Source of the DNA: Paragordius varius
Lineage: Eukaryota > Animalia > Nematomorpha
Assembly: GCA_964247055.1 (NCBI GenBank)
Contig: OZ176054.1
Span: 4,712,001 to 4,776,000, forward strand
Length of the DNA: 64,000 nucleotides
Direction: 5' to 3'
A program made the translations under genes and the position numbers. Numbering within the stretch: the stretch's first letter is position 1; each line of letters starts with the position of its first letter. Shown here one piece after another: positions 38,660-60,700 of the stretch. Below the pieces are notes generated by a model. The model was not told the origin of the DNA, searched no databases, and saw nothing but the letters and a program-made list of their open reading frames with translations.

Positions 38660-41600
38660 ATATTAGCATGGGTTATATAAATTGATTGTTGAAAGTGATG
38701 GGATTTTTGGATATTCTAATATTAGCATGGTTAAAATTAATTTACTGTTGAAAAGTGATGGTTGATTGGATGTTCTATTAGCATGGGTAATATAAATTGA
38801 TTGTTGAAAAGTGATGGTCGATTGTTGGATATTCAAATATTAGCATGGGTTATATAAATTGATTGTTGAAAGTGATGGTTGATTGTTGGATATTCAAATA
38901 TTAGCTTGGGTTATATAAATTGATTGTTGAAAAGTGATGGTTGATTGTTGGATATTCTAATATTAGCATGGGTAATATAAATTTAGTGTGTAAAAGTGAT
39001 GGTTGATTGTTGGATATTCTAATATTAGCATGGGTTATATAAATTGATTGTTGAAAGTGATGGGATTTTTGGATATTCTAATATTAGCATGGTTAAAATT
39101 AATTTACTGTTGAAAAGTGATGGTTGATTGGATGTTCTATTAGCATGGGTAATATAAATTGATTGTTGAAAAGTGATGGTCGATTGTTGGATATTCAAAT
39201 ATTAGCATGGGTTATATAAATTGATTGTTGAAAGTGATGGTTGATTGTTGGATATTCAAATATTAGCTTGGGTTATATAAATTGATTGTTGAAAAGTGAT
39301 GGTTGATTGTTGGATATTCTAATATTAGCATGGGTAATATAAATTTAGTGTGTAAAAGTGATGGTTGATTGTTGGATATTCTAATATTAGCATGGATTAT
39401 ATAAATTGATTGTTGAAAAGTGATGGTTGTTTGTTGGATATTCTAATATTAGCATGGGTAATATATTTTGATTGTTGAAAGTGATGGTTGATTGTTGGAT
39501 ATCCCAATATTAGCATGGGTAATATAAATTGATTGTTGAAAAGTGATGGTTGATTGTTGGATATTCTAATATTAGCATGGGTAATATAAATTGATTGTTG
39601 AAAGTGATGGTTGATTGTTGGATATTCTAATATTAGCATGGGTAATATAAATTTAGTGTGTAAAAGTGATGGTTGATTGTTGGATATTCAAATATTAGCT
39701 TGGGTTATATAAATTGATTGTTGAAAAGTGATGGTTGATTGTTGGATATTCTAATACAAGCATGGGTGATATAAATTTTGTGTGTAAAAGTGATGGTTGA
39801 TTGTTGGATATTCTAATATTAGCATGGGTTACATAAATTGATTGTTGAAAAGTGATGGTTGTTTGTTGGATATTCTAATATTAGCATGGGTAATATAAAT
39901 TGATTGTTGAAAGTGATGGTTCAATATTAGCATGAGTAATATAAATTGATTGTTGAAAAGTGATGGTTGATTGTTGGATATTCTAATATTAGCATGGGTA
40001 ATATAAATTGATTGTTGAAAGTGATGGTTGATTGTTGGATATTCTAATATTACCATGGGTAATATAAATTTAGTGTGTAAAAGTGATGGTTGATTGTTGG
40101 ATATTCTAATATTAGCATGGGTAATATAAATTGATTGTTGAAAGTGATGGTTGATTTTTGGATATTCTAATATTAGCATGGTTAAAATTAATTTACTGTT
40201 GAAAAGTGATGGTTGATTGGATGTCCTATTAGCATGGGTAATATAAATTGATTGTTGAAAAGTGATGGTCGATTGTTGGATATTCAAATATTAGCATGGG
40301 TTATATAAATTGATTGTTGAAAGTGATGGTTGATTGTTGGATATTCAAATATTAGCTTGGGTTATATAAATTGATTGTTGAAAAGTGATGGTCGATTGCT
40401 GGATATTCAAATATTAGCATGGGTTATATAAATTGATTGTTGAAAGTGATGGTTGATTGTTGGATATTCAAATATTAGCTTGGGTTATATAAATTGATTG
40501 TTGAAAAGTGATGGTTGATTGTTGGATATTCTAATACAAGCATGGGTGATATAAATTTAGTGTGTAAAAGTGATGGTTGATTGTTGGATATTCTAATATT
40601 AGCATGGGTTACATAAATTGATTGTTGAAAAGTCATGGTTGTTTGTTGGATATTCTAATATTAGCATAGGTAATATAAATTGATTGTTGAAAGTGATGGT
40701 TGATTGTTGGATATCCCAATATTAGCATGGGTAATATAAATTGATTGTTGAAAAGTGATGGTTGATTGTTGGATATTCTAATATTAGCATGGGTAATATA
40801 AATTTAGTGTGTAAAAGTGATGGTCGATTGTTGGATATTCAAATATTAGCATGGGTTATATAAATTGATTGTTGAAAGTGATGGGATTTTTGGATATTCT
40901 AATATTAGCATGGTTAAAATTAATTTACTGTTGAAAAGTGATGGTTGATTGGATGTTCTATTAGCATGGGTAATATAAATTGATTGTTGAAAAGTGATGG
41001 TCGATTGTTGGATATTCAAATATTAGCATGGGTTATATAAATTGATTGTTGAAAGTGATGGTTGATTGTTGGATATTCAAATATTAGCTTGGGTTATATA
41101 AATTGATTGTTGAAAAGTGATGGTTGATTGTTGGATATTCTAATATTAGCATGGGTAATATAAATTTAGTGTGTAAAAGTGATGGTTGATTGTTGGATAT
41201 TCTAATATTAGCATGGGTTATATAAATTGATTGTTGAAAGTGATGGGATTTTTGGATATTCTAATATTAGCATGGTTAAAATTAATTTACTGTTGAAAAG
41301 TGATGGTTGATTGGATGTTCTATTAGCATGGGTAATATAAATTGATTGTTGAAAAGTGATGGTCGATTGTTGGATATTCAAATATTAGCATGGGTTATAT
41401 AAATTGATTGTTGAAAGTGATGGTTGATTGTTGGATATTCAAATATTAGCTTGGGTTATATAAATTGATTGTTGAAAAGTGATGGTTGATTGTTGGATAT
41501 TCTAATATTAGCATGGGTAATATAAATTTAGTGTGTAAAAGTGATGGTTGATTGTTGGATATTCTAATATTAGCATGGATTATATAAATTGATTGTTGAA

Positions 41601-43680
41601 AAGTGATGGTTGTTTGTTGGATATTCTAATATTAGCATGGGTAATATATTTTGATTGTTGAAAGTGATGGTTGATTGTTGGATATCCCAATATTAGCATG
41701 GGTAATATAAATTGATTGTTGAAAAGTGATGGTTGATTGTTGGATATTCTAATATTAGCATGGGTAATATAAATTGATTGTTGAAAGTGATGGTTGATTG
41801 TTGGATATTCTAATATTAGCATGGGTAATATAAATTTAGTGTGTAAAAGTGATGGTTGATTGTTGGATATTCAAATATTAGCTTGGGTTATATAAATTGA
41901 TTGTTGAAAAGTGATGGTTGATTGTTGGATATTCTAATACAAGCATGGGTGATATAAATTTTGTGTGTAAAAGTGATGGTTGATTGTTGGATATTCTAAT
42001 ATTAGCATGGGTTACATAAATTGATTGTTGAAAAGTGATGGTTGTTTGTTGGATATTCTAATATTAGCATGGGTAATATAAATTGATTGTTGAAAGTGAT
42101 GGTTCAATATTAGCATGGGTAATATAAATTGATTGTTGAAAAGTGATGGTTGATTGTTGGATATTCTAATATTAGCATGGGTAATATAAATTGATTGTTG
42201 AAAGTGATGGTTGATTGTTGGATATTCTAATATTACCATGGGTAATATAAATTTAGTGTGTAAAAGTGATGGTTGATTGCTGGATATTCTAATATTAGCA
42301 TGGGTAATATAAATTGATTGTTGAAAGTGATGGTTGATTTTTGGATATTCTAATATTAGCATGGTTAAAATTAATTTACTGTTGAAAAGTGATGGTTGAT
42401 TGGATGTCCTATTAGCATGGGTAATATAAATTGATTGTTGAAAAGTGATGGTCGATTGTTGGATATTCAAATATTAGCATGGGTTATATAAATTGATTGT
42501 TGAAAGTGATGGTTGATTGTTGGATATTCAAATATTAGCTTGGGTTATATAAATTGATTGTTGAAAAGTGATGGTCGATTGTTGGATATTCAAATATTAG
42601 CATGGGTTATATAAATTGATTGTTGAAAGTGATGGTTGATTGTTGGATATTTAAATATTAGCTTGGGTTATATAAATTGATTGTTGAAAAGTGATGGTTG
42701 ATTGTTGGATATTCTAATACAAGCATGGGTGATATAAATTTAGTGTGTAAAAGTGATGGTTGATTGTTGGATATTCTAATATTAGCATGGGTTACATAAA
42801 TTGATTGTTGAAAAGTCATGGTTGTTTGTTGGATATTCTAATATTAGCATAGGTAATATAAATTGATTGTTGAAAGTGATGGTTGATTGTTGGATATCCC
42901 AATATTAGCATGGGTAATATAAATTGATTGTTGAAAGTGATGGTTGATTGTTGGATATTCTAATATTAGCATGGGTAATATAAATTTAGTGTGTAAAAGT
43001 GATGGTCGATTTTTGGATATTCAAATATTAGCATGGGTTATATAAATTGATTGTTGAAAGTGATGGGATTTTTGGATATTCTAATATTAGCATGGTTAAA
43101 ATTAATTTACTGTTGAAAAGTGATGGTTGATTGGATGTTCTATTAGCATGGGTAATATAAATTGATTGTTGAAAAGTGATGGTCGATTGTTGGATATTCA
43201 AATATTAGCATGGGTTATATAAATTGATTGTTGAAAGTGATGGTTGATTGTTGGATATTCAAATATTAGCTTGGGTTATATAAATTGATTGTTGAAAAGT
43301 GATGGTTGATTGTTGGATATTCTAATATTAGCATGGGTAATATAAATTTAGTGTGTAAAAGTGATGGTTGATTGTTGGATATTCTAATATTAGCATGGAT
43401 TATATAAATTGATTGTTGAAAAGTGATGGTTGTTTGTTGGATATTCTAATATTAGCATGGGTAATATATTTTGATTGTTGAAAGTGATGGTTGATTGTTG
43501 GATATCCCAATATTAGCATGGGTAATATAAATTGATTGTTGAAAAGTGATGGTTGATTGTTGGATATTCTAATATTAGCATGGGTAATATAAATTGATTG
43601 TTGAAAGTGATGGTTGATTGTTGGATATTCTAATATTAGCATGGGTAATATAAATTTAGTGTGTAAAAGTGATGGTTGAT
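38660..43680. repeat. About 2,183-bp higher-order repeat with internal 362-bp duplication
   Basis: GGGATTTTTGG marker at 38700, 39062, 40883, 41245 and 43065; ORF offsets 39397/41580 and 39829/42012. Confidence 0.82.
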
Positions 43681-46600
43681 TGTTGGATATTCTAATATTA
43701 GCATGGGTAATATAAATTGATTGTTGAAAGTGATGGTTGATTTTTGGATATTCTAATATTAGCATGGTTAAAATTAATTTACTGTTGAAAAGTGATGGTT
43801 GATTGGATGTTCTATTAGCATGGGTTATATAAATTGATTGTTGAAAAGTGATGGTCGATTGTTGGATATTCAAATATTAGCATGGGTTATATAAATTGAT
43901 TGTTGAAAGTGATGGTTGATTGTTGGATATTCAAATATTAGCTTGGGTTATATAAATTGATTGTTGAAAAGTGATGGTTGATTGTTGGATATTCTAATAT
44001 TAGCATGGGTAATTTAAATGTAGTGTGTAAAAGTGATGGTCGATTGTTGGATATTTAAATATTAGCATGGGTTATATAAATTGATTGTTGAAAGTGATGG
44101 TTGATTGTTGGATATTCAAATATTAGCTTGGGTTATATAAATTGATTGTTGAAAAGTGATCGTCGATTGTTGGATATTCAAATATTAGCATGGGTTATAT
44201 AAAGTGATTGTTGAAAGTGATGGTTGATTGTTGGATATTCAAATATTAGCTTGGGTTATATAAATTGATTGTTGAAAAGTGATGGTTGATTGTTGGATAT
44301 TCTAATATTAGCATGGGTGATATAAATTTAGTGTGTAAATGATGGTTGATTGTTGGATATTCTAATATTAGCATGGGTTATATAAATTGATTGTTGAAAA
44401 GTGATGGTTGTTTGTTGGATATTCTAATATTAGCATGGGTAATATAAATTGATTGTTGAAATTATGGTTGATTGTTGGATATCCCAATATTAGCATGGGT
44501 AATATAAATTGATTTTTGAAAAGTGATGGTTGATTGTTGGATATTCTAATATTAGCATAGGTAATATAAATTTAGTGTGTAAAAGTGATGGTCGATTGTT
44601 GGATATTCAAATATTAGCATGGGTTATATAAATTGATTGTTGAAAGTGATGGGATTGTTGGATATTCTAATATTAGCATGGGTAATATAAATTAATTGTT
44701 GAAAAGTGATGGTTGATTGTGGGATAGTCTAATATTAGCATGGGTAATATAAATTAATTGTTGAAAAGTGATGGTTGATTGTTGGATATTCTAATATTAG
44801 CATGGATAATATAAATTGATTGTTGAAAAGTCATGGTTGATTGTTGGATATTCAAATATTAGCATGAATAATATAAATTAATTGTTGAAAAGTGATGGTT
44901 GATTGTTGGATATTCTAATATTATCATGGGTAATATAAATTGATTGTTGAAAAGTCATAATTGATTGTTGGATATTCTAATATTAACATGGGTAATATAA
45001 ATTGATTGTTGAAAAGTGATGGTTGATTGTTGGATATTCTAATATTAGCATGGGTAATATAAATTAATTGTTGAAAAGTGATGGTTGATTGTTGGATATT
45101 CTAATATTAGCATGGGTAATATAAATTGATTGTTGAAAAGTGATGGTTGATTGTTGGATATCCCAATATTAGCATGGGTAATATAAATTGATTGTTGAAA
45201 AGTGATGGTTGATTGTTGGATATTCTAATATTAGCATGGTTAAAATAAATTTATTGTTGAAAGTGATGGTTGATTGTTGGATATTCTAATATTAGCATGG
45301 TTAAAATAAATTTATTGTTGAAAGTGATGGTTGATTGTTGGATATTCTAATATTAGCATGGTTAAAATAAATTGATTGTTGAAAAGTTATAGTTGATTGT
45401 TGGATATTCTAATATTAGCATGGGTAATATAAATTGATTGTTGAAAAGTGATGGTTGATTGTTGGATATTCTAATATTAGCATGGGTAATATAAATTGAT
45501 TGTTGAAAGTGATGGTTGATTGTTGGATATTCTAATATTAGCATGGTTAAAATTAATTTACTGTTGAAAAGTGATGGTTGATTGGATGTTCTATTAGCAT
45601 GGGTAATATAAATTGATTGTTGAAAAGTGATGGTCGATTGTTGGATATTCAAATATTAGCATGGGTTATATAAATTGATTGTTGAAAGTGATGGTTGATT
45701 GTTGGATATTCAAATATTAGCCTGGGTTATATAAATTGATTGTTGAAAAGTGATGGTTGATTGTTGGATATTCTAATATTAGCATGGGTAATATAAATTG
45801 ATTGTTGAAAGTGATGGTCGATTGTTGGATATTCAAATATTAGCATGGGTAATATAAATTGATTGTTGAAAGTGATGGTTTATTGTTGGATATTCTAATA
45901 TTAGCACGGTTAAAATAAAATTATTGTTGAAAGTGATGGTTGATTGTTGGATATTCTAATATTAGCATGGTTAAAATAAATTTATTGTTGAAAGTGATGG
46001 TTGATTGTTGGATATTCTAATATTAGCATGGTTAAAATAAATTTATTGTTGAAAGTGATGGTTGATTGTTGGATATTCTAATATTAGCATGGTTAAAATA
46101 AATTGATTGTTGAAAAGTTATAGTTGATTGTTGGATATTCTAATATTAGCATGGGTAATATAAATTGAATGTTGAAAGTGATGGTCGATTGTTGGATATT
46201 CAAATATTAGCATGGGTAATATAAATTTATTGTTGAAAGTGATGGTTGATTGTTGGATATTCAAATATTAGCATAGGTTATATAAATTGATTGTTGAAAA
46301 GTGATGGTTGATTGTTGAATATTCTAATATTAGCATGGGTAATATAAATTAATTGTTGAAAGGTGATGGTTGATTGTTGGATATTCTAATATTAGCATGG
46401 GTAATATAAATTGATTGTTGAAAGTGATGGTTGATTGTTGGATATTCTAATATTAGCATGGTTAAAATTAATTTACTGTTGAAAAGTGATGGTTGATTGG
46501 ATGTTCTATTAGCATGGGTAATATAAATTGATTGTTGAAAAGTGATGGTCGATTGTTGGATATTCAAATATTAGCATGGGTTATATAAATTGATTGTTGA

Positions 46601-46792
46601 AAGTGATGGTTGATTGTTTGATATTCTAATATTAGCTTGGGTAATATGAATTGATTGTTGAAAAGTGATGGTTGATTGTTGGATATTCTAATATTAGCAT
46701 GGGTAATATAAATTGATTGTTGAAAGTGATGGTTGATTGTTGGATATCCCAATATTAGCATGGGTAATATAAATTGATTGTTGAAAAGTTAT

Positions 46793-46797
46793 GGTTG
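46793..46797 (+). other. Target-site duplication GGTTG (left copy)
   Basis: The satellite reads ...AAAGTTATGGTTG then element. The empty-site monomer is ...GTTATGGTTGATTGTTGGATAATCT, so GGTTG is present once in the target and twice after insertion. Confidence 0.93.
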
Positions 46798-46815
46798 TGT
46801 TAAAAGGGTTATCAT
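46798..46815 (+). repeat. Terminal inverted repeat, 18 bp (element 3' end)
   Basis: TGTTAAAAGGGTTATCAT at 46798-46815 is the reverse complement of 50882-50899; the match breaks at the 19th base (T46816 vs G50881). Confidence 0.97.
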
Positions 46816-46888
46816 TGTTGTTTAAGTTGTTGGTTAAGTTTTTAGTCTTTTCGTTATTATCATTGTTGTTTAAGTTTTTAGTCTTTTC
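46809..46888. repeat. Short direct duplication at element 3' end (20+12 bp motif, two copies)
   Basis: TTATCATTGTTGTTTAAGTT at 46809-46828 and 46857-46876, each followed by TTTAGTCTTTTC (46841-46852 after a 12-bp insert, and 46877-46888). Confidence 0.9.
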
Positions 46889-46935
46889 CTCACTTCTCCC
46901 TTCTTCTCCTTCGGCCGACCAATCCATGCGATTCC

Positions 46936-48048
46936 TTAATTGATCAGCATGTTTGCGGATGATTTTGCCATTGTCGTTGACATTGTACGATAACCATCCC
47001 GTTCTGTCGACGATTTGTCCCTCCCTCCAACCAGAACACAATTCATTCTTGATCTATTTTGCCCCTTTTCAAACTCCTGCGGAATGTCGGGAGTATCCAT
47101 GAATTCGTTGGGTTTCGTTTTCATCCATGTTAATGGGCTTTGCATAGTTCTTTTTAAAAACAAATGCGCGGGAGTCTCCTTCGTAGAACTGTGATGCGTG
47201 TTTCGGTAAGCCCATAAGATTTGGTTTAATCTTCGTACTGGGTCTGCGGAAAGGTCTGCGGAAAGTGGGGTTGACATTGAATAATGATTTTTTAGAGTGT
47301 AAATTACCCTCTCTACCAACCCATTTGTTCGGGGGTGGTAGGGAGCTGATGTTACGTGTTTTATATTAGAGGAAGCTAAAGTTCTCTCAAACTCCCCCGA
47401 TTTAAAATAAGAGCCGTTATCAGTAACCACCACTTTTGGGTACCCATACCGGCAAAAACAGGTTTCTAAAAACTTAAGGATATTACCGGTATTCACAGAA
47501 CGTAACGTTTCTACCTCCACCCAGCGGGTGCAATGATCAATTAGTACCACCCAGTATAAATTGTCAATGGGTCCAGCGATATCTAGGTGGAGCCGTTCCC
47601 ATATGGTTGTATTCCCGTTCCATTGATAGGTGGGATTTTCGGGTACATTTGGGCGCAGCCTTTGACAATTTTGGCAACTACGCACCCATTTATCGATATC
47701 TTGGCTCAACCCGGGCCAATAAACCTTTTCACGGCCTAATAGTTTCATGGCTTGTATTCCCGGATGGCCACTATGCAGGTATCTTAAAATATCTGGCTTA
47801 ATTTTGTTCGGGATTATTACCCGATCTCCCACAAATAATAGACCGTATGCATCCTCAATTTCATTTTTTATTGCTATGAAAGGCTTGACCAGGGGGTCCG
47901 TCCAATTATTAGATCTTAGGGCTACTTTTAACTTTGCTATAGTAGGATCCTTCATAGACTCTTGATAGATAATTTCTCTATTTAAATTTAATTCGTTGGA
48001 CCAAATCAAATGAACATTGCTACTTTCATCGTCTTTCTCAAACGCCAT
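46936..48048 (-). CDS. pol: Retroviral-type integrase (HHCC zinc finger plus D,D35E core), fragment of pol; last ~38 codons are out of frame
   Basis: HSGH...CQNC zinc finger; catalytic D 47581-47583 (LHLDIAGP), D 47419-47421 (TDNG) and E 47311-47313 (NGLVER), with 35 residues between the last two; YHPRTNG motif. Confidence 0.94.
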   Translation of the reverse strand: MAFEKDDESSNVHLIWSNELNLNREIIYQESMKDPTIAKLKVALRSNNWTDPLVKPFIAIKNEIEDAYGLLFVGDRVIIPNKIKPDILRYLHSGHPGIQAMKLLGREKVYWPGLSQDIDKWVRSCQNCQRLRPNVPENPTYQWNGNTTIWERLHLDIAGPIDNLYWVVLIDHCTRWVEVETLRSVNTGNILKFLETCFCRYGYPKVVVTDNGSYFKSGEFERTLASSNIKHVTSAPYHPRTNGLVERVIYTLKNHYSMSTPLSADLSADPVRRLNQILWAYRNTHHSSTKETPAHLFLKRTMQSPLTWMKTKPNEFMDTPDIPQEFEKGQNRSRMNCVLVGGRDKSSTERDGYRTMSTTMAKSSANMLIN

Positions 48049-48158
48049 CGGCTCCTGGTTTTCAATGGGGAGTCTCGATAGGCAGTCAGCTATGTTTTCT
48101 GTACCAGGGTGATATTCTATGTTAAAATCGAATACCGATGTTCTAGTTATCCAGCGTA

Positions 48159-48953
48159 CTAGCTTACAATTATTAATTTTAGATCTCTTTGAGGCCCAAA
48201 TAGTTTCACTAAAGGTTTGTGGTCCGTTTGTATTATAAATTTCCTGCCATACAAAAAGGTTTTAAACTTCTCTAACGCTATTAGGATAGATTTTGCTTCT
48301 CGCTCAATTACTGAATAGTTTCCTTCAGCCTGAGAGCATTTTTTTGACGTGTAGGCGATCGGGCGATTACCCGCTGTTGTTCTATGTGATAAAATAGCAC
48401 CGTATCCCGACATTGACGCGTCGGTTTCCAAGACTATAGGTAGTTTGGGATTATACGGATGCAAGGAACTACTCTGGCAGATCAAGTCTTTAGCTTTTTT
48501 GAATATCGAATCATGCGTTAGCGTCCAACACCATTTTTGTTTGTTACCTGCTAATTTATGTAGTTCTCCCATTAAAATGCTTAGGGAAGGGATGAATTTT
48601 GCATGAAAATTAAGTAAACCCAAAAATGATCTAAGAGTGGTTTTGTTGGTCGGGGTCGGGCACTCTTGGATGGCTTTAATTTTGTTTGGGGAGGGCTTAA
48701 TGCAATTTTCAGAAATAATGTGACCAAGATATTCTACAGATGGTTGAAAAAGTTTTATTTTATCTTTGCGCAATTTTAATCCCATTGTCTCCAATTTGGT
48801 AAATACCTTTATTAGGTTGTCCTTGTGCTTTGTCTCGGTTTCTCCTGTCACGATAACGTCATCTAAATAAACGGCTGTACCTGCGCAATCTTTTAATAAC
48901 TCGTCCATTATTTGTTGAAAGAAACTTGGGGCGCAATTCAACCCGAAAGGCAA
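48159..48953 (-). CDS. pol: Reverse transcriptase core and RNase H (frameshift-bounded fragment of pol)
   Basis: LPFGLNCAPSFFQ, YLDD (48858-48869), YLGH, LRSFLGL, RNase H LETDAS, NYSVIEREA, TDHKPL. The track's start is a TTG (Leu) codon, not a true initiation site. Confidence 0.93.
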   Translation of the reverse strand: MPFGLNCAPSFFQQIMDELLKDCAGTAVYLDDVIVTGETETKHKDNLIKVFTKLETMGLKLRKDKIKLFQPSVEYLGHIISENCIKPSPNKIKAIQECPTPTNKTTLRSFLGLLNFHAKFIPSLSILMGELHKLAGNKQKWCWTLTHDSIFKKAKDLICQSSSLHPYNPKLPIVLETDASMSGYGAILSHRTTAGNRPIAYTSKKCSQAEGNYSVIEREAKSILIALEKFKTFLYGRKFIIQTDHKPLVKLFGPQRDLKLIIVS

Positions 48954-48975
48954 TCGTTTATACTTATAAAACCCC

Positions 48976-50580
48976 TTATGTGTCGAAATTGTTAGTAAGT
49001 GCTGTATCTGGGTCTACTGGAATTTGAAAATAGGCGTCTTTCAAATCTAGTGTCGAGAAAGATTTGCCGAAGGAAATTTTTGAGATGAGGTCGTCAAAGG
49101 TTGGGATTATGTATTGCGGCGGTTTTATGTGTGGATTTATACTTATTTTAAAATCCGCGCATATTCTAAGCTCTTTATTAGGTTTTATAATATTTACAGT
49201 AGGGCTGGACCAAACGATTCTAGTCTTTTTTGGATCAACAGGCTCAATTATATCCAGTTTTACCAATCTATTTATCTCATCCTCCACTTTGCTTTGTAAT
49301 GATAGTGGCACCCTTCTACTTGGAAAAATTCTACCACAATTATTATTACTTAAAAACACTTTAATCGGGTCGCCCTTCCAGCAACCAAGGCCCTCAGAAA
49401 ATAACTTGCTAAATTTGTTATATATATCATATGAAGATAAGTTATTTATTATTACATGATTGGGTAATTTTAAATTAAATTGTTTTATCCAGTCCATTCC
49501 AAATATTGATGGTAAGTTGTTGTTTATAATAAAGCACTCTAGAATGTGCGTTCTTTTATCTAATTCAACCTGTAATTTGCATTTACCTAATGTTTTTATA
49601 CGATTATTATTGTATGCATGTATGAAAATATTATTGTTATCAAAATCTAGTGCTGGCTTGCCGAGACGGCACCAGTTTTTATAATTTATGATTGAAATAT
49701 CGGCACCCGTATCAAAAATCATTTCAATAGGAATATTATTTATTTTAGGAACAATTTGGGGTTTTTTTGTCTTATTAAAAAGGGAATATGCTTTAAACAC
49801 TACCTTACAACATCGAGCAAAGTGGTTTGAACGATGGCATCTATAACATTCTTTCCCATAGGCAGGGCAATGTCCCAACGTATGAGTCGTCCCACATTTT
49901 GTGCAGGTTCGTCGGTTATTATTACTATGGCTGCTCTTTGATTGGTGAAGTGTGGCTATTTCGTTTATTTCACCATTACTACTGTGGTTCTTATTATTGT
50001 TACTTTTATTATCATTATCAATATTGATGGACAGCACTTCTGTATTCGTTAGTCCATCTCGTGCCTTCTCATGTGATAAAGCAATATTTACCACCGTATT
50101 TAGAGAAACGGGAGCCCCGTTTTCTAAAGCTTCTGGGAACCGTGTGAATAGTTCCATTTCCACGGCTTGCTCGTCTAACCCGGCGATGAATACATCTCTG
50201 ATGTGCTCGTCAATGTTTGACGAGAACCGGCAGTGGATGGCCATTTGTTTAACTCTTAACAGGAATTCTGTGAACGTTTCCGTTCTCCCCCTCTTCATTT
50301 TAATTAAATCAAAACGCGACGAAAAAATATTCCTTGAGGGGGAGAAGATTTTTATGCCGGCGTTTAAAAGATCTGGGAATGGTGTGTCGTCTATTGCTTG
50401 TGGATAGAAATAATTTTCAATTTTATTAATATTTTCGATTCCTCCGAAAGCCAACAAACATGCTTTCATATTTTCATCGGTGGCTGCGACGTTCTTGACC
50501 TCTAAATTGCGTTTAATATATGTAATATAATTTGTAAACTCAACATTTGGATTAAAACATGATAAATTAATTTTTTCCAT
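48976..50580 (-). CDS. gag-pol: Gag (two zinc knuckles) - aspartic protease - N-terminal reverse transcriptase, ends at frameshift
   Basis: Gag core IRDVFIAGL. Knuckles CTKCGTTHTLGHC-PAYGKE-CYRCHRSNHFARC (49807-49905). Protease IFDTGADISII (DTG 49705-49713). RT motifs WSSPTV, LRICADFK, FSTLDLKDAYFQIP. Confidence 0.93.
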   Translation of the reverse strand: MEKINLSCFNPNVEFTNYITYIKRNLEVKNVAATDENMKACLLAFGGIENINKIENYFYPQAIDDTPFPDLLNAGIKIFSPSRNIFSSRFDLIKMKRGRTETFTEFLLRVKQMAIHCRFSSNIDEHIRDVFIAGLDEQAVEMELFTRFPEALENGAPVSLNTVVNIALSHEKARDGLTNTEVLSINIDNDNKSNNNKNHSSNGEINEIATLHQSKSSHSNNNRRTCTKCGTTHTLGHCPAYGKECYRCHRSNHFARCCKVVFKAYSLFNKTKKPQIVPKINNIPIEMIFDTGADISIINYKNWCRLGKPALDFDNNNIFIHAYNNNRIKTLGKCKLQVELDKRTHILECFIINNNLPSIFGMDWIKQFNLKLPNHVIINNLSSYDIYNKFSKLFSEGLGCWKGDPIKVFLSNNNCGRIFPSRRVPLSLQSKVEDEINRLVKLDIIEPVDPKKTRIVWSSPTVNIIKPNKELRICADFKISINPHIKPPQYIIPTFDDLISKISFGKSFSTLDLKDAYFQIPVDPDTALTNNFDT

Positions 50581-50591
50581 AGACCGCGCCA
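50581..50591 (-). promoter_or_regulatory. Primer-binding site TGGCGCGGTCT (probably tRNA-Ser type)
   Basis: TGG lies 2 nt after the CA end of the LTR-like segment. TGGCGCGGTC resembles the tRNA-Ser-type PBS TGGCGCAGTC with one G:U wobble. The tRNA identity was not verified. Confidence 0.75.
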
Positions 50592-50627
50592 GTTGACAAA
50601 TAGTTAATATAAATTATAAAGGATATA

Positions 50628-50638
50628 TTTATTTATTT
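50628..50638 (-). terminator. Candidate poly(A) signal (overlapping AATAAA) in LTR-like R/U5
   Basis: Minus strand reads CTAAATAAATAAATA about 35-45 nt before the LTR-like end, a typical position for an LTR polyadenylation signal. Confidence 0.45.
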
Positions 50639-50697
50639 AGTATAACATCAAAACTGAATAATATAATATAATGTGTTCTGTGCGTTACAATGATTCC

Positions 50698-50704
50698 TTA
50701 TATA
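50698..50704 (-). promoter_or_regulatory. Candidate TATA box (TATATAA) in LTR-like segment
   Basis: Minus strand reads GTATATAAGG at 50705-50696. An Inr-like TCAGTT lies at 50657-50652, about 50 nt downstream, further than the usual 25-30 nt. The AT-rich context makes chance matches plausible. Confidence 0.4.
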
Positions 50705-50881
50705 CATTAGGAAATTTGGTTATTGCATTCACAAGGATAAAGTTGTGTGGTTTAAACGTTGTTAAAGATAATAAGTATAAATAAAATAATTTGCATTCAC
50801 AACCAAGGTAATATATATTTTTAACGTAACAAGGACCAAAGTGTATTATGCACTAAAAAAGAGAAGGATAATTTGCGTATG

Positions 50882-50899
50882 ATGATAACCCTTTTAACA
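50882..50899 (-). repeat. Terminal inverted repeat, 18 bp (element 5' end)
   Basis: ATGATAACCCTTTTAACA on +, which reads TGTTAAAAGGGTTATCAT on the element strand. Confidence 0.97.
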
Positions 50900-50904
50900 G
50901 GTTG
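50900..50904 (+). other. Target-site duplication GGTTG (right copy)
   Basis: The element ends ...TTTTAACA and is immediately followed by GGTTGATTGTTGGATAATCT. Confidence 0.93.
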
Positions 50905-51027
50905 ATTGTTGGATAATCTAATATTAGCATGGGTAATATAAATTAATTGTTGAAAAGTGATGGTTGATTGTTGGATATTCTAATATTAGCATGGGTAATA
51001 TAAAATGATTGTTGAAAGTGATGGTTT

Positions 51028-53810
51028 ATTGTTGGATATTCTAATATTAGCACGGTTAAAATAAAATTATTGTTGAAAGTGATGGTTGATTGTTGGATAT
51101 TCAAATATTAACATGGGTTATATAAATTGATTGTTGAAAGTGATGGTTTATTGTTGGATATTCTAATATCAGCAGTGATGGTTGATTGTTGGATATTCTA
51201 ATATTAGCATGGTTAAAATAAATTTATTGTTGAAAGTGATGGTTGATTGTTGGATATTCTAATATTAGCATGGTTAAAATAAATTTATTGTTGAAAGTGA
51301 TGATTGATTGTTGGATATTCTAATATTAGCATGGTTAAAATAAATTGATTGTTGAAAGGTTATAGTTGATTGTTGGATATTCTAATATTAGCATGGGTAA
51401 TATAAATTGATTGTTGAAAAGTGATGGTTGATTGTTGGATATTCTAATGTTAGCATGGGTAATATAAATTGATTGTTGAAAGTGATGGTTGATTGTTGGA
51501 TATTCTAATATTAGCATGGTTAAAATTAATTTACTGTTGAAAAGTGATGGTTGATTGGATGTTCTATTAGCATGGGTAATATAAATTGATTGTTGAAAGT
51601 GATGGTTGATTGTTGGATATTCAAATATTAGCCTGGGTTATATAAATTGATTGTTGAAAAGTGATGGTTGATTGTTGGATATTCTAATATTAGCATGGGT
51701 AATATAAATTGATTGTTGAAAGTGATGGTCGATTGTTGGATTTTCAAATATTAGCATAGGTAATATAAATTGATTGTTGAAAAGTGATGGTCGATTGTTG
51801 GATATTCAAATATTAGCATGGGTAATATAAATTGATTGTTGAAAGTGATGGTTGATTGTTGGATATTCAAATATTAGCATGGGTTATATAAATTGATTGT
51901 TGAAAAGTGATGGTTGATTGTTGGATATTCTAATATTAGCATGGGTAATATAAAATGATTGTTGAAAGTGATGGTTTATTGTTGGATATTCTAATATTAG
52001 CACGGTTAAAATAAAATTATTGTTGAAAGTGATGGTTGATTGTTGGATATTCTAATATTAGCATGGTTAAAATAAATTTATTGTTGAAAGTGATGGTTGA
52101 TTGTTGGATATTCTAATATTAGCATGGTTAAAATAAATTTATTGTTGAAAGTGATGGTTGATTGTTGGATATTCTAATATTAGCATGGTTAAAATAAATT
52201 GATTGTTGAAAAGTTATAGTTGATTGTTGGATATTCTAATATTAGCATGGGTAATATAAATTGATTGTTGAAAGTGATGGTCGATTGTTGGATATTCAAA
52301 TATTAGCATGGGTAATATAAATTTATTTTTGAAAGTGATGGTTGATTGTTGGATATTCAAATATTAGCATGGTTTATATAAATTGATTGTTGAAAAGTGA
52401 TGGTTGATTGTTGGATATTCTAATATTAGCACGGTTAAAATAAAATTATTGTTGAAAGTGATGGTTGATTGTTGGATATTCAAATATTAACATGGGTTAT
52501 ATAAATTGATTGTTGAAAGTGATGGTTTATTGTTGGATATTCTAATATCAGCAGTGATGGTTGATTGTTGGATATTCTAATATTAGCATGGTTAAAATAA
52601 ATTTATTGTTGAAAGTGATGGTTGATTGTTGGATATTCTAATATTAGCATGGTTAAAATAAATTTATTGTTGAAAGTGATGATTGATTGTTGGATATTCT
52701 AATATTAGCATGGTTAAAATAAATTGATTGTTGAAAGGTTATAGTTGATTGTTGGATATTCTAATATTAGCATGGGTAATATAAATTGATTGTTGAAAAG
52801 TGATGGTTGATTGTTGGATATTCTAATGTTAGCATGGGTAATATAAATTGATTGTTGAAAGTGATGGTTGATTGTTGGATATTCTAATATTAGCATGGTT
52901 AAAATTAATTTACTGTTGAAAAGTGATGGTTGATTGGATGTTCTATTAGCATGGGTAATATAAATTGATTGTTGAAAGTGATGGTTGATTGTTGGATATT
53001 CAAATATTAGCCTGGGTTATATAAATTGATTGTTGAAAAGTGATGGTTGATTGTTGGATATTCTAATATTAGCATGGGTAATATAAATTGATTGTTGAAA
53101 GTGATGGTCGATTGTTGGATTTTCAAATATTAGCATGGGTAATATAAATTGATTGTTGAAAAGTGATGGTCGATTGTTGGATATTCAAATATTAGCATGG
53201 GTAATATAAATTGATTGTTGAAAGTGATGGTTGATTGTTGGATATTCAAATATTAGCATGGGTTATATAAATTGATTGTTGAAAAGTGATGGTTGATTGT
53301 TGGATATTCTAATATTAGCATGGGTAATATAAAATGATTGTTGAAAGTGATGGTTTATTGTTGGATATTCTAATATTAGCACGGTTAAAATAAAATTATT
53401 GTTGAAAGTGATGGTTGATTGTTGGATATTCTAATATTAGCATGGTTAAAATAAATTTATTGTTGAAAGTGATGGTTGATTGTTGGATATTCTAATATTA
53501 GCATGGTTAAAATAAATTTATTGTTGAAAGTGATGGTTGATTGTTGGATATTCTAATATTAGCATGGTTAAAATAAATTGATTGTTGAAAAGTTATAGTT
53601 GATTGTTGGATATTCTAATATTAGCATGGGTAATATAAATTGATTGTTGAAAGTGATGGTCGATTGTTGGATATTCAAATATTAGCATGGGTAATATAAA
53701 TTTATTGTTGAAAGTGATGGTTGATTGTTGGATATTCAAATATTAGCATGGTTTATATAAATTGATTGTTGAAAAGTGATGGTTGATTGTTGGATATTCT
53801 AATATTAGCA
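51028..53810. repeat. 1,379-bp tandem duplication
   Basis: ORFs 51335/52714; ATCAGCAGTG marker at C51170 and C52549. Confidence 0.85.
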
Positions 53811-54724
53811 TGGGTAATATAAATTGATTGTTGAAAGTGATGGTTGATTGTTGGATATTCAAATATTAGCATGGGTTATATAAATTGATTGTTGAAAAGT
53901 GATGGTTGATTGTTGGATATTCTAATATTAGCATGGGTTATATAAATTGATTGTTAAAAGTGATGGTTGATTGTTGGATATTCTAATATTAGCATGGGTA
54001 ATATAAAATGATTGTTGAAAGTGATGGTTTATTGTTGGATATTCTAATATTAGCACGGTTAAAATAAATTTATTGTTGAAAGTGATGGTTGATTGTTGGA
54101 TATTCTAATATTAGCATGGTTAAAATAAATTTATTGTTGAAAGTGATGGTTGATTGTTGGATATTCTAATAATAGCATGGTTAAAATAAATTTATTGTTG
54201 AAAGTGATGGTTGATTGTTGGATATTCTATATTAGCATGGGTAAAATAAATTGATTGTTGAAAAGTTATAGTTGATTGTTGGATATTCTAATATTAGCAT
54301 GGGTAATATAAATTGATTGTTGAAAGTGATGGTCGATTGTTGGATATTCTAATATTAGCATGGGTAATATAAATTTATTGTTGAAAGTGATGGTTGATTG
54401 TTGGATATTCAAATATTAGCATGGGTTATATAAATTGATTGTTGAAAAGTGATAGTTGATTGTTGGATATTCTAATATTAGCATGGGTAATATAAATTGA
54501 TTGTTGAAAGTGATGGTTGATTGTTGGATATCCCAATATTAGCATGGGTAATATAAATTGATTGTTGAAAAGTGATGGTTGATTGTTGGATATCCCAATA
54601 TTAGCATGGGTAATATAAATTGATTGTTGAAAAGTGATGGTTGATTGTTGGATATTCTAATATTAGCATGGGTAATACAAATTGATTGTTGAAAGTGATG
54701 GTTGATTGTTGGATATTCTAATAT

Positions 54725-57700
54725 TAGCATGGTTAAAATAAATTTATTGTTGAAAGTGATGGTTGATTGTTGGATATTCTAATAATAGCATGGTTAAAAT
54801 AAATTTATTGTTGAAAGTGATGGTTGATTGTTGGATATTCTAATATTAGCATGGTTAAAATAAATTGATTGTTGAAAAGTTATAGTTGATTGTTGGATAT
54901 TCTAATATTAGCATGGGTAATATAAATTGATTGTTGAAAGTGATGGTCGATTGTTGGATATTTAAATATTAGCATGGGTAATATAATTTTATTGTTGAAA
55001 GTGATGGTTGATTGTTGGATATTCAAATATTAGCATGGGTTATATAAATTGATTGTTGAAAAGTGATGGTTGATTGTTGGATATTCTAATATTAGCATGG
55101 GTAATATAAATTGATTGTTGAAAGTGATGGTTGATTGTTGGATATCCCAATATTAGCATGGGTAATATAAATTGATTGTTGAAAAGTGATGGTTGATTGT
55201 TGGATATTCTAATTTTAGCATGGGTAATATAAAGTGATTGTTGAAAAGTAATGGTTGATTATTGGATATTCTAATATTAGCTTGGGTAAAATAAATTGAG
55301 TGTTGTAAAGTGATGGTTGATTGTTGGATATTCTAATATTAGCAATATAAATTGATTATTGAAAAGTGATGGTTGATTGTTGTATATTCTAATATTAGTA
55401 TGGGTAACATATATTGATTGTTGAAAAGTGATGGTTGATTATTGGATATTCTAATATTAGCATGGAAATAAATTGATAGTTGAAAAGTGATGGTTGATTG
55501 TTGGCTATTCTTATATAAGCATGGAAATAAAGTGATTGTTGAAAAGTTATGGTTGATTGTTGGATATTCTAATATTAGCATGGTTATAATAAATTGAGTG
55601 TTGTAAAGTGATGGTTGATTGTTGGATATTCTAATATTAGCATGGGTGATATAAACTAATTGTTGAAAAGTGATGGTTGATTGTTGGGTATTCCAATATT
55701 AGCATGGAAATAAAGTGATTGTTGAAAAGTGATGGTTGATTATTGGATATTCTAATATTAGCATGGAAATAAATTGATAGTTGAAAAGTGATGGTTGATT
55801 GTTGGCTATTCTTATATAAGCATGGAAATAAAGTGATTGTTGAAAAGTTATGGTTGATTGTTGGATATTCTAATATTAGCATGGTTATAATAAATTGAGT
55901 GTTGTAAAGTGATGGTTGATTGTTGGATATTCTAATATTAGCATGGGTAATATAAATTGATTATTGAAAAGTGATGGTTGATTGTTGTATATTCTAATAT
56001 TAGCATGGGTAACATATATTGATTGTTGAAAAGTGATGGTTGATTGTTGGATATTCCAATATTAGCATGGAAATAAAGTGATTGTTGAAAAGTGATGGTT
56101 GATTATTGGATATTCTAATATTAGCATGGAAATAAATTGATAGTTGAAAAGTGATGGTTGATTGTTGTATATTCTAATATTAGTATGGGTAACATATATT
56201 GATTGTTGAAAAGTGATGGTTGATTATTGGATATTCTAATATTAGCATGGGTAATATAAATTGATTGTTGAAAAGTGATGGTTGATTGTTGTATATTCTA
56301 ATATTAGCATGGGTAACATATATTGAGTGTTGAAAAGGATGGTTGATTATTGGATATTCTAATATTAGCGTGGATAATATAAATTAATTGTTGAAAAGTG
56401 ATGGTTGATTATTGGATATTCTAATATTAGCATGGAAATAAATTGATAGTTAAAAAGTGATGGCTGATTGTTGGCTATTCTAATATAAGCATGGAAATAA
56501 AGTGATTGTTGAAAAGTTATGGTTGATTGTTGGATATTCTAATATAAGCATGGAAATAAAGTGATTGTTGAAAAGTTATGGTTGATTGTTGGATATTCTA
56601 ATATTAGCATGGGTAAAATAAATTGAGTGTTGTAAAGTGATGGTTGATTGTTGGATATTCTAATATTAGCATGGGTAATATAAATTGATTATTGAAAAGT
56701 GATGGTTGATTGTTGTATATTCTAATATTAGTATGGGGTAAATTAATTGATTGTTGAAAAGTGATGGTTGATTGTTGGATATTCAAATATTAGCATGGGT
56801 TATATAAATTGATTGTTGAAAAGTGATGGTTGATTGTTGGATATTCTAATATTAGCATGGGTAATATAAAATGATTGTTGAAAAGTGATGGTTGATTGTT
56901 GGATATCCCAATATTAGCATGGGGAAAATTAATTAACTGTTGAAAAGTGATGGTTGATTGTTGGATATTCTAGTATTAGCATGGGTAATATAAATTGATT
57001 ATTGAAAAGTGATGGTTGATTGTTGTATATTCTAATATTAGTATGGGGTAAATTAATTGATTGTTGAAAAGTGATGGTCGATTGTTGGATATTCAAATTT
57101 AGCATGGGTTATATAAATTGATTGTTGAAAGTGATGGTTGATTGTTGGATATTCTAATATTAGCATGGGTAATATATATTTAGTGTGTAAAAGTGATGGT
57201 TGATTGTTGGATATTCTAGTATTAGCATGGGTAATATAAATTGATTGTTGAAAGTGATGGTTTATTGTTGGATATTCTAATATTAGCAGTGATGGTTGAT
57301 TGTTGGATATTCTAATATTAGCATGGGTAAAATAAATTTATTGTTGAAAGTGATGGTTGATTGTTGGATATTCTAATATTAGCATGGTTAAAATTAATTT
57401 ATTGTTGAAAGTGATGGTTGATTGTTGGATATTCTAATATTAGCATGGTTAAAATAAATTGATTGTTGAAAAGTTATAGTTGATTGTTGGATATTCTAAT
57501 ATTAGCATGGGTAATATAAATTGATTGTTGAAAGTGATGGTCGATTGTTGGATATTCAAATATTAGCATGGGTAATATAAATTTATTGTTGAAAGTGATG
57601 GTTGATTGTTGGATATTCAAATATTAGCATGGGTTATATAAATTGATTGTTGAAAAGTGATGGTTGATTGTTGGATATTCTAATATTAGCATGGGTAATA

Positions 57701-60700
57701 TAAATTGATTGTTGAAAGTGATGGTTGATTGTTGGATATCCCAATATTAGCATGGGTTATATAAATTGATTGTTAAAAGTGATGGTTGATTGTTGGATAT
57801 TCTAATATTAGCATGGGTAATATAAAATGATTGTTGAAAGTGATGGTTTATTGTTGGATATTCTAATATTAGCACGGTTAAAATAAATTTATTGTTGAAA
57901 GTGATGGTTGATTGTTGGATATTCTAATATTAGCATGGTTAAAATAAATTTATTGTTGAAAGTGATGGTTGATTGTTGGATATTCTAATAATAGCATGGT
58001 TAAAATTAATTTATTGTTGAAAGTGATGGTTGATTGTTGGATATTCTAATATTAGCATGGTTAAAATAAATTGATTGTTGAAAAGTTATAGTTGATTGTT
58101 GGATATTCTAATATTAGCATGGGTAATATAAATTGATTGTTGAAAGTGATGGTCGATTGTTGGATATTTAAATATTAGCATGGGTAATATAAATTTATTG
58201 TTGAAAGTGATGGTTTATTGTTGGATATTCTAATATTAGCAGTGATGGTTGATTGTTGGATATTCTAATATTAGCATGGGTTATATAAATTGATTGTTGA
58301 AAAGTGATGGTTGATTGTTGGATATTCTAATATTAGCATGGGTAATATAAATTGATTGTTGAAAGTGATGGTTTATTGTTGGATATTCTAATATTAGCAG
58401 TGATGGTTGATTGTTGGATATTCTAATATTAGCATGGGTAAAATAAATTTATTGTTGAAAGTGATGGTTGATTGTTGGATATTCTAATATTAGCATGGTT
58501 AAAATAAATTGATTGTTGAAAAGTTATAGTTGATTGTTGGATATTCTAATATTAGCATGGGTAATATAAATTGATTGTTGAAAGTGATGGTCGATTGTTG
58601 GATATTTAAATATTAGCATGGGTAATATAATTTTATTGTTGAAAGTGATGGTTGATTGTTGGATATTCAAATATTAGCATGGGTTATATAAATTGATTGT
58701 TGAAAAGTGATGGTTGATTGTTGGATATTCTAATATTAGCATGGGTAATATAAATTGATTGTTGAAAGTGATGGTTGATTGTTGGATATCCCAATATTAG
58801 CATGGGTAATATAAATTGATTGTTGAAAAGTGATGGTTGATTGTTGGATATTCTAATTTTAGCATGGGTAATATAAAGTGATTGTTGAAAAGTAATGGTT
58901 GATTTTTGGATATTCTAATATTAGCTTGGGTAAAATAAATTGAGTGTTGTAAAGTGATGGTTGATTGTTGGATATTCTAATAATAGCATGGTTAAAATAA
59001 ATTTATTGTTGAAAGTGATGGTTGATTGTTGGATATTCTAATAATAGCATGGTTAAAATAAATTTATTGTTGAAAGTGATGGTTGATTGTTGGATATTCT
59101 AATATTAGCATGGTTAAAATAAATTGATTGTTGAAAAGTTATAGTTGATTGTTGGATATTCTAATATTAGCATGGGTAATATAAATTGATTGTTGAAAGT
59201 GATGGTCGATTGTTGGATATTTAAATATTAGCATGGGTAATATAATTTTATTGTTGAAAGTGATGGTTGATTGTTGGATATTCAAATATTAGCATGGGTT
59301 ATATAAATTGATTGTTGAAAAGTGATGGTTGATTGTTGGATATTCTAATATTAGCATGGGTAATATAAATTGATTGTTGAAAGTGATGGTTGATTGTTGG
59401 ATATCCCAATATTAGCATGGGTAATATAAATTGATTGTTGAAAAGTGATGGTTGATTGTTGGATATTCTAATTTTAGCATGGGTAATATAAAGTGATTGT
59501 TGAAAAGTAATGGTTGATTTTTGGATATTCTAATATTAGCTTGGGTAAAATAAATTGAGTGTTGTAAAGTGATGGTTGATTGTTGGATATTCTAATATTA
59601 GCAATATAAATTGATTATTGAAAAGTGATGGTTGATTGTTGTATATTCTAATATTAGTATGGGTAACATATATTGATTGTTGAAAAGTGATGGTTGATTA
59701 TTGGATATTCTAATATTAGCATGGAAATAAATTGATAGTTGAAAAGTGATGGTTGATTGTTGGCTATTCTTATATAAGCATGGAAATAAAGTGATTGTTG
59801 AAAAGTTATGGTTGATTGTTGGATATTCTAATATTAGCATGGTTATAATAAATTGAGTGTTGTAAAGTGATGGTTGATTGTTGGATATTCTAATATTAGC
59901 ATGGGTGATATAAACTAATTGTTGAAAAGTGATGGTTGATTGTTGGGTATTCCAATATTAGCATGGAAATAAAGTGATTGTTGAAAAGTGATGGTTGATT
60001 ATTGGATATTCTAATATTAGCATGGAAATAAATTGATAGTTGAAAAGTGATGGTTGATTGTTGGCTATTCTTATATAAGCATGGAAATAAAGTGATTGTT
60101 GAAAAGTTATGGTTGATTGTTGGATATTCTAATATTAGCATGGTTATAATAAATTGAGTGTTGTAAAGTGATGGTTGATTGTTGGATATTCTAATATTAG
60201 CATGGGTAATATAAATTGATTATTGAAAAGTGATGGTTGATTGTTGTATATTCTAATATTAGCATGGGTAACATATATTGATTGTTGAAAAGTGATGGTT
60301 GATTGTTGGAAATTCCAATATTAGCATGGAAATAAAGTGATTGTTGAAAAGTGATGGTTGATTATTGGATATTCTAATATTAGCATGGAAATAAATTGAT
60401 AGTTGAAAAGTGATGGTTGATTGTTGTATATTCTAATATTAGTATGGGTAACATATATTGATTGTTGAAAAGTGATGGTTGATTATTGGATATTCTAATA
60501 TTAGCATGGGTAATATAAATTGATTGTTGAAAAGTGATGGTTGATTGTTGTATATTCTAATATTAGCATGGGTAACATATATTGATTGTTGAAAAGGATG
60601 GTTGATTATTGGATATTCTAATATTAGCGTGGATAATATAAATTAATTGTTGAAAAGTGATGGTTGATTATTGGATATTCTAATATTAGCATGGAAATAA

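What the first reader, a model, noticed from the sequence alone, without database searches (positions are those of the whole stretch)
46793..50904. Gypsy gag-pol element with one LTR but DNA-transposon-like 18-bp terminal inverted repeats and a clean 5-bp TSD
Seen: a full Gag-PR-RT-RH-IN coding region bounded by perfect 18-bp TIRs beginning TGTTA, with a GGTTG TSD. The 306-bp 5' segment has no copy at the 3' end, and its own inner end (TTTGTCA-AC-PBS) differs from the element's 3' terminus (CCCTTTTAACA), so this is not the ordinary short inverted edge of paired LTRs. Established: Ty3/Gypsy replication needs two direct LTRs, whereas Ginger DNA transposons have a Gypsy-like DDE integrase with TGT-starting TIRs but no Gag or RT, and have been proposed to be related to LTR elements by gain or loss of these parts. 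Inference: this is either a member of an unrecognised TIR-bounded gag-pol family or a one-off snapshot of an LTR retrotransposon converting to a two-identical-end substrate that its integrase could still insert. Either way the TSD shows this exact structure was the integration substrate, not the result of a later deletion.
Basis: partly seen in the sequence, partly recalled or inferred. Interest (0 to 1): 0.92.

Follow-up and report, generated by a model that had tools for sequence, protein, structure and literature searches.

The report
Miscopied Gypsy element with inverted cap
An ordinary gypsy-type jumping gene was miscopied so that its far end was cut short and capped with an 11-letter backwards copy of its own first letters, yet it was still inserted in the normal way; it is a dead-end accident, one of several from a sloppy but otherwise normal family, not a new kind of element.

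Summary
Window 46798-50899 (minus strand) is a gag-PR-RT-RH-IN Ty3/Gypsy copy. It has one 306-bp LTR, a perfect 18-bp terminal inverted repeat and a GGTTG target-site duplication in register with a 61-bp satellite.

The TIR-family reading fails. About 15 sister copies in the same genome have two normal direct LTRs, a PBS, a PPT and 5-bp TSDs. The window copy follows them up to about 195 bp before the PPT. It then carries 11 nt, CCCTTTTAACA, the reverse complement of U3 nt 1-11. The join lies at a 7-nt microhomology, ATGATAA (chance about 0.001). This junction is unique in the assembly.

My reading is an aberrant reverse-transcription product. A polymerase primed on the microhomology and ran off a plus-sense strand whose 5' end is the PPT-defined U3 terminus. 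That gave a cDNA with two U3-type ends, which integrase inserted normally.

- four end in an inverted U3 terminus;
- two of those four carry a poly(A)-derived T-run at the inverted junction.

Read-level validation was not possible. Another note of this scan (s1-285172) flagged the same microhomology on this same stretch.

The parts
46793..46797 (.). Left copy of the 5-bp target-site duplication GGTTG, part of the satellite monomer
46798..46808 (-). 11-nt cap. It reads CCCTTTTAACA on the element's sense strand and is the reverse complement of U3 nt 1-11. Sister copies lack it at this position.
   Evidence: collinearity with sisters ends here
46809..46815 (-). 7-nt microhomology ATGATAA. It is pol sequence shared with the sisters and also the complement of U3 nt 12-18. 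With the cap it forms the 18-bp right TIR arm.
46936..48048 (-). Integrase ORF piece (H2C2 zinc finger and rve core). The sisters' C-terminal part of pol (about 65 aa), the PPT and the 3' LTR are missing downstream.
48159..48953 (-). ORF piece with the C-terminal part of RT and RNase H
48976..50580 (-). ORF piece with gag-like region (zinc knuckle), aspartic protease and the start of RT. It ends at a stop inside RT.
50582..50593 (-). AC dinucleotide plus primer-binding site TGGCGCGGTC directly after the LTR
   Evidence: a longer tRNA copy is seen in L045
50594..50899 (-). The only LTR (306 bp, U3-R-U5). A TATA-like motif lies at about nt 195 and AATAAA at nt 262/266. The inferred poly(A) site is at nt 280-282. 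Its first 18 nt (50882-50899) form the left TIR arm.
50900..50904 (.). Right copy of the TSD GGTTG
40000..46797 (.). 61/62-bp satellite array, the insertion target. It continues at 50900 to at least 57999.

Best explanation
This is a dead-end, aberrantly reverse-transcribed copy of an ordinary, recently active Ty3/Gypsy family. During cDNA synthesis in the virus-like particle, a polymerase (most likely the element's RT) paired 7 nt (ATGATAA in pol with TTATCAT at U3 nt 12-18). It then copied to the very 5' end of a plus-sense U3 strand. That 5' end is created at the PPT/U3 border, either on PPT-primed plus-strand DNA or on the RNase H-cut RNA. My preferred version: a short plus-sense oligonucleotide covering U3 nt 1-18 misprimed minus-strand synthesis on a genomic RNA about 195 nt upstream of the PPT, and the plus strand later ran off this primer. 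The result is a blunt linear cDNA that lacks the pol C-terminus, the PPT and the 3' LTR but carries a U3-type end on both sides. Integrase bound the two U3 ends and made a normal concerted insertion with a 5-bp stagger into the satellite. Lacking a 3' R and a PPT, the copy cannot replicate further. Shown: collinearity break, 11-nt inverted cap, 7-nt microhomology, TSD, uniqueness, normal sisters. Inferred: which strand switched, that RT rather than a host polymerase made the join, and that integrase used a U3/U3 pair.
For: - Sisters L002-L013 have two LTRs, a PBS, a PPT (AAGGAAGAAGG, then TA, then TGTT...) and 5-bp TSDs.
- The window copy aligns to L002 over reference nt 1-4127 at 98.7% and then diverges. 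Its last 11 nt equal the reverse complement of LTR nt 1-11.
- Microhomology of 7 nt or more is expected in about 0.1% of random joins in this sequence. This matches the microsimilarity-dependent template switches described for LTR elements, median 6 bp (PMC5131818).
- The cap ends exactly at U3 nt 1, as run-off copying predicts.
- The TSD is in satellite register and has the same length as in 12 normal copies and 4 solo LTRs.
- The junction 20-mer is unique in the assembly.
- The same family left other abnormal integrants with TSDs. L014, L020, L041 and L042 end in an inverted U3 terminus. L014 and L020 have an A/T-run exactly at the predicted poly(A) site, 14-19 nt after AATAAA, so an RNA 3' end took part.
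- L042 has an 8-nt microhomology at a sense/antisense join.
- L019 of the same family captured an Argonaute L1-PAZ-L2 mRNA piece, which independently shows frequent template switching.
Against:
- The order of events and the identity of the primer or template cannot be read from one end product.
- A plus-strand fold-back onto its own 5' end fits the sequence equally well. It leaves open how both ends became duplex.
- Integrase use of two U3 ends is inferred from the TSD, not tested.
- Only 40 of 291 candidate family matches were scored, so a second copy with a similar but diverged junction could have been missed.
Confidence: 0.85

Rival explanations
1. It is a member of a self-propagating, TIR-bounded gag-pol family, a Ginger-like intermediate between LTR retrotransposons and DNA transposons.
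For: It has a perfect 18-bp TIR starting TGT, a 5-bp TSD and a DDE integrase. Several other integrants of the family also have inverted U3 ends.
Against: The junction is unique. Every other inverted-end integrant has a different internal structure, so none has been copied. Short-cap patterns occur at or below control frequency genome-wide. The copy lacks a PPT and a 3' R, so it cannot be reverse-transcribed again. No excision activity is known for LTR-element integrases (own knowledge). The frame is broken in three pieces.
Confidence: 0.02
2. It was a normal two-LTR insertion that later lost its 3' part through deletion, recombination or a nested inverted insertion.
For: Deletions and nested insertions are common in LTR elements. 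This family has complex clusters such as L043 and L024.
Against: A deletion that removed the 3' LTR would also remove the right TSD copy. Here GGTTG is intact on both sides and the satellite register is preserved to the base. The 11-nt cap comes neither from the adjacent pol sequence nor from the satellite. End joining at a microhomology would keep the internal part of an LTR and discard its terminal 11 nt, the opposite of what is seen.
Confidence: 0.05
3. It is an assembly or library artefact, for example a fold-back chimera in long reads.
For: The insertion lies in a long satellite array, which is hard to assemble. No reads could be examined.
Against: An artefact would not create a 5-bp duplication in satellite register together with an 11-nt cap that stops exactly at the LTR terminus. 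Five analogous loci lie in unrelated flanks, each with its own TSD.
Confidence: 0.04
4. It is a product of autointegration, or of host-mediated capture of cDNA fragments at a chromosome break.
For: Integrase can attack its own cDNA, and cDNA fragments can be captured at breaks (own knowledge).
Against: Strand transfer would place the CA-3' end upstream of the target sequence, not downstream of pol as here. It would also yield circles without free ends. Capture at a break gives no regular 5-bp TSD. Neither process explains the 7-nt microhomology.
Confidence: 0.02

Closest known systems
Canonical Ty3/Gypsy LTR retrotransposons (the sister copies in this genome, e.g. L002-L013)
   Same: Same sequence family at 93-99% identity. 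Same gag-PR-RT-RH-IN order, 5' LTR, PBS and 5-bp TSD.
   Different: This copy lacks the last ~195 bp of pol, the PPT and the 3' LTR. It ends in an 11-nt inverted copy of the U3 start.
Template-switch chimeras made by LTR retrotransposons (LTR-mediated retroposition; Tan et al. 2016, PMC5131818)
   Same: A junction at short microsimilarity (median 6 bp there, 7 bp here). The product was integrated with element ends and a TSD. The same family also made a host-mRNA chimera, L019.
   Different: The switch here went to the element's own U3 terminus in the opposite polarity, not to a host mRNA. It replaced the 3' LTR instead of lying between two LTRs.
Ginger1/Ginger2 DNA transposons (PMC2836005)
   Same: A Gypsy-like DDE integrase, TIRs beginning TGT and a short TSD.
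   Different: This locus has gag and RT and is a single copy derived from a normal LTR family.
DIRS-type retrotransposons with inverted terminal repeats (PMC7192593)
   Same: A retroelement bounded by inverted repeats.
   Different: DIRS elements use a tyrosine recombinase (abstract of PMC3950715). They make no TSD (own knowledge). Here there is an rve DDE integrase and a 5-bp TSD.
L1 5' inversions by twin priming, and retroviral self-priming or aberrant strand transfer (own knowledge; PMC12657518 for HIV-1 deletions)
   Same: Polarity-switching or misplaced priming during reverse transcription, which leaves rearranged defective copies.
   Different: Here the rearrangement recreates an integrase recognition end, so the product still integrates by the integrase route.

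Membership tests
Ty3/Gypsy LTR retrotransposon | pol domain order PR-RT-RNaseH-IN, with gag upstream | tested here: met
   Pfam hits in that order in the window copy and in the 1327-aa sister ORF. A gag zinc knuckle is present.
Ty3/Gypsy LTR retrotransposon | Two direct long terminal repeats | tested here: not met
   This copy has one LTR only. The sisters have two. So it is a defective derivative of a family that meets the feature.
Ty3/Gypsy LTR retrotransposon | PBS next to the 5' LTR and a polypurine tract before the 3' LTR | tested here: inconclusive
   The PBS is present. The sisters' PPT (AAGGAAGAAGG before TA and TGTT) is deleted in this copy.
Ty3/Gypsy LTR retrotransposon | Short TSD of fixed length made by integrase | tested here: met
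   GGTTG here. 5-bp TSDs in 12 full copies, 4 solo LTRs and 6 other abnormal copies.
Ginger DNA transposons | No gag and no reverse transcriptase | tested here: not met
   Gag knuckle, RVT_1 and RT_RNaseH are present.
Ginger DNA transposons, or any TIR family | Several copies sharing the same two termini at different sites | tested here: not met
   The 3' junction is unique. Short-cap patterns are at control level. Caveat: only part of the candidate matches was scored.
DIRS-like retrotransposons | Tyrosine recombinase instead of a DDE integrase, and no TSD | tested here: not met
   rve and Integrase_H2C2 are found and no recombinase hit. A TSD is present.
Microsimilarity-dependent template-switch products of LTR elements | Microhomology at the breakpoint beyond chance | tested here: met
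   7 nt. P(7 or more) is about 0.001 in 200,000 simulated joins.
   No reference sequences were at hand. The clade does not affect the verdict.

The most novel reading that the evidence does not exclude
This family habitually makes cDNAs whose ends are regenerated by run-off copying on PPT- or primer-defined termini, and its integrase accepts U3/U3 pairs, and even TA-3' ends. If so, TIR-bounded gag-pol or LTR-only DNAs enter the genome repeatedly: 6 abnormal among roughly 30 examined insertions. That would be a natural, observable route by which an LTR retrotransposon could yield integrase-recognised TIR elements, the step proposed for the origin of Ginger-like transposons.
Probability: 0.08. 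Interest if true: 0.7.

Novelty: new variant of a known kind. Interest (0 to 1): 0.38.

Why it matters
The locus itself is a defective, single-copy insertion with no likely function. Its value is as a natural experiment. It suggests that at most 18 bp of U3 terminal sequence on both ends is enough for a normal 5-bp concerted integration in vivo. It marks the PPT/U3 cleavage site as the source of the new end. Together with its sister accidents it maps the poly(A) site, the tRNA primer and the template-switch habits of a recently active animal Gypsy family. That same family also captured a host Argonaute fragment. For annotation, it warns that TIR plus TSD around gag-pol need not mean a new element class.

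Tried and rejected
- Search for further short inverted caps: TGTTAAAAGGG followed by a non-LTR base gave 18 and 81 hits against 33 and 121 for the reversed control. Only the known L014 site coincides with family sequence.
- Literature: six full-text searches found no description of U3/U3-bounded LTR-element integrants. They gave only the general template-switch mechanism (PMC5131818), DIRS inverted LTRs, and HIV-1 aberrant strand transfers that make deletions (PMC12657518, no inversions mentioned).
- Rejected on the evidence: post-insertion deletion, microhomology-mediated end joining, autointegration and assembly artefact (see rivals).
- Not attempted: RT/IN trees with Mag and Ginger references, and organism identification. 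Neither would change the verdict.
Full report
**What is there**

Window 46798-50899 holds a 4102-bp element on the minus strand, inside a 61/62-bp satellite array that runs from at least 40000 to 57999. The repeat finder gives one perfect 18-nt inverted pair at the exact ends, 46798-46815 and 50882-50899.

GGTTG stands on both sides. The flanking satellite copies lie 4169 bp apart. That is the element plus one GGTTG plus one 62-bp period, so removing the insertion restores the array in register.

On the minus strand the order is as follows:
- a 306-bp LTR, then AC and a PBS-like TGGCGCGGTC;
- a gag-like region with a CX2CX4HX4C knuckle and a DTG protease;
- RT, RNase H, and an integrase with H2C2 finger and rve core.

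The frame is broken into three ORF pieces.

**What the relatives show**

A search of the window's own genome (110.6 Mb, 44 contigs) found the family at many sites. Twelve full-length copies (L002-L013) are 4.6 kb long with two direct LTRs of 294-306 bp. Three more have paired LTRs with internal changes. All twelve full copies and four solo LTRs have 5-bp TSDs.

At least one sister has identical LTRs and an uninterrupted 1327-aa gag-pol frame with the Ty3/Gypsy domain order. The family was therefore active very recently.

Aligning the window's 3' end with three sisters shows collinearity up to ...AACAATGATAA. The sisters then continue for about 195 bp of pol, the PPT (AAGGAAGAAGG, then TA) and a normal LTR starting TGTTAAAAGGG. 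The window copy instead has CCCTTTTAACA followed directly by the flank.

Those 11 nt are the reverse complement of LTR nt 1-11. The preceding ATGATAA is pol sequence that is also the complement of LTR nt 12-18. So the 18-bp TIR is an 11-nt inverted cap plus a 7-nt microhomology.

In 200,000 simulated joins between this pol sequence and the inverted LTR, microhomology of 7 nt or more occurred in about 0.1%. The 20-mer across the junction occurs once in the assembly. All other near-matches are ordinary LTR starts.

**How it most likely arose**

The join keeps the terminal 11 nt of U3 and stops exactly at U3 nt 1. That is what primer extension to the 5' end of a template gives. It is the opposite of what end joining at a microhomology gives, since end joining discards the terminal flap.

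A plus-sense strand with its 5' end at U3 nt 1 exists only because of the specific cut at the PPT/U3 border. It is either PPT-primed plus-strand DNA or the RNA 3' fragment.

I therefore read the locus as an error of reverse transcription at a 7-nt microhomology. This is the kind of switch documented for LTR elements, with a median microsimilarity of 6 bp (PMC5131818).

Two versions fit the sequence:
- A short U3 nt 1-18 oligonucleotide misprimed minus-strand synthesis on a genomic RNA at the pol ATGATAA. This gives a fully duplex end after plus-strand run-off, and I prefer it.
- A growing plus strand switched onto a plus-strand 5' end.

Either way the product has U3-type ends on both sides. 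The 5-bp TSD, the same length as for normal copies, indicates concerted integration by the element's integrase. That step is inferred, not shown.

Without a PPT and a 3' R the copy cannot replicate again.

**The same family made other such accidents**

BLAST of a natural full copy against the fetched loci, followed by inspection of the junctions, gave these five abnormal integrants. Coordinates are in G000.

| Locus | Coordinates | Structure | TSD |
|---|---|---|---|
| L014 | C10:2578750-2582882 | 11-12 nt of the U3 start fused to the PBS, full body, PPT, TGTT, a T-run, then an inverted LTR from nt 280 to 1 | ATAAG |
| L020 | C1:1832435-1835279 | 17 nt of inverted U5 end, pol from reference nt 1901, PPT, LTR nt 1 to about 120, 23 T, then an inverted LTR from nt 285 to 1 | ATGAT |
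| L041 | C1:14936004-14936623 | LTR plus PBS, followed at once by an inverted LTR | GACAC |
| L042 | C1:9459769-9461911 | A scrambled body between LTR nt 1-45 and an inverted LTR nt 66-1, with an 8-nt microhomology at the first sense/antisense join | GCCGT |
| L045 | C1:8284787-8286283 | Starts at LTR nt 290, then a 32-nt copy of the primer tRNA, then pol | ACAGC |

The T-runs in L014 and L020 sit at LTR nt 280-282, which is 14-19 nt after AATAAA. The inverted pieces are therefore copies of U3-R-poly(A), the RNA 3' end. This places the errors in reverse transcription rather than in the chromosome.

L019 of the same family carries an Argonaute L1-PAZ-L2 piece between the PBS and pol, with TSD CCTGT.

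Divergence of these abnormal copies from a young sister ranges from under 1% to about 10%. The habit is therefore long-standing.

Each abnormal copy has its own structure. None has been copied.

**Comparison with known kinds**

The locus is a defective member of an ordinary Ty3/Gypsy family.
- It fails the Ginger definition: it has gag and RT, and it is a single copy.
- It fails the DIRS definition: it has a DDE integrase and a TSD.
- It resembles template-switch chimeras of LTR elements. The difference is that the switch went to the element's own terminus in inverted polarity and so recreated an integrase end.

Six searches of the paper library found no report of such U3/U3-bounded integrants. 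That is not proof that none exists.

**Limits**

- No reads could be examined.
- Only part of the candidate matches was scored.
- No further genome stretches could be fetched.
- The clade and the host species were not determined.

**Verdict**

The sober alternative is right and can now be stated mechanistically. Interest is modest. It is raised somewhat by the recurrent inverted-end integrants, which would repay a genome-wide tabulation.

Noticed in passing
L019:3737-4522 (G000:C2, minus strand): A copy of the same family has 785 bp of intron-free host Argonaute (ArgoL1-PAZ-ArgoL2) between the PBS and pol reference nt ~1890. Its TSD is CCTGT.
   Followed up: partly
L045:1488-2984 (G000:C1:8284787-8286283): An integrant that starts at LTR nt 290. 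It continues through AC into a 32-nt copy of the primer tRNA (T-arm-like GGATCCGAACC), beyond the usual stop, then jumps to pol nt 2441. Its TSD is ACAGC.
   Followed up: partly
L008, L010, L046, L048, L049 (right ends): Some copies and solo LTRs end 11 nt earlier, at ...TATATTA, than the usual ...TTTGTCA, still with 5-bp TSDs. L008 and L010 keep the extra 11 nt in their 5' LTR. Older copies end ...TATATCA. The integrase seems to use two alternative right ends, one with TA-3'.
   Followed up: partly
L015, L028, L043, L044: Older copies with internal inverted duplications (for example nt 1516-1028 inverted, then 544 onward) and a head-to-head cluster on C8. No clear TSDs. It is unresolved whether these are nested insertions or multi-switch cDNAs.
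   Followed up: partly
L024:1480-3500 and L003 (G000:C4:9929802-9936406): The host flank plus the LTR and the first 1.3 kb of an element are duplicated in tandem just upstream of a full copy, with the same flank sequence before both LTR starts. This is a segmental duplication or an assembly issue, not a transposition product.
   Followed up: no
window 40000-57999: A long 61/62-bp satellite array (84-91% matches) with higher-order 96-, 123-, 157- and 184-bp variants. The element is the only interruption seen in this stretch.
   Followed up: no
window 46816-46890 versus L002/L003/L006: The pol C-terminal region just before the breakpoint is a variable 36-48-nt tandem repeat. Its copy number differs among sisters, and ATGATAA occurs in two of the repeat units (reference nt 4067 and 4121).
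   Followed up: partly
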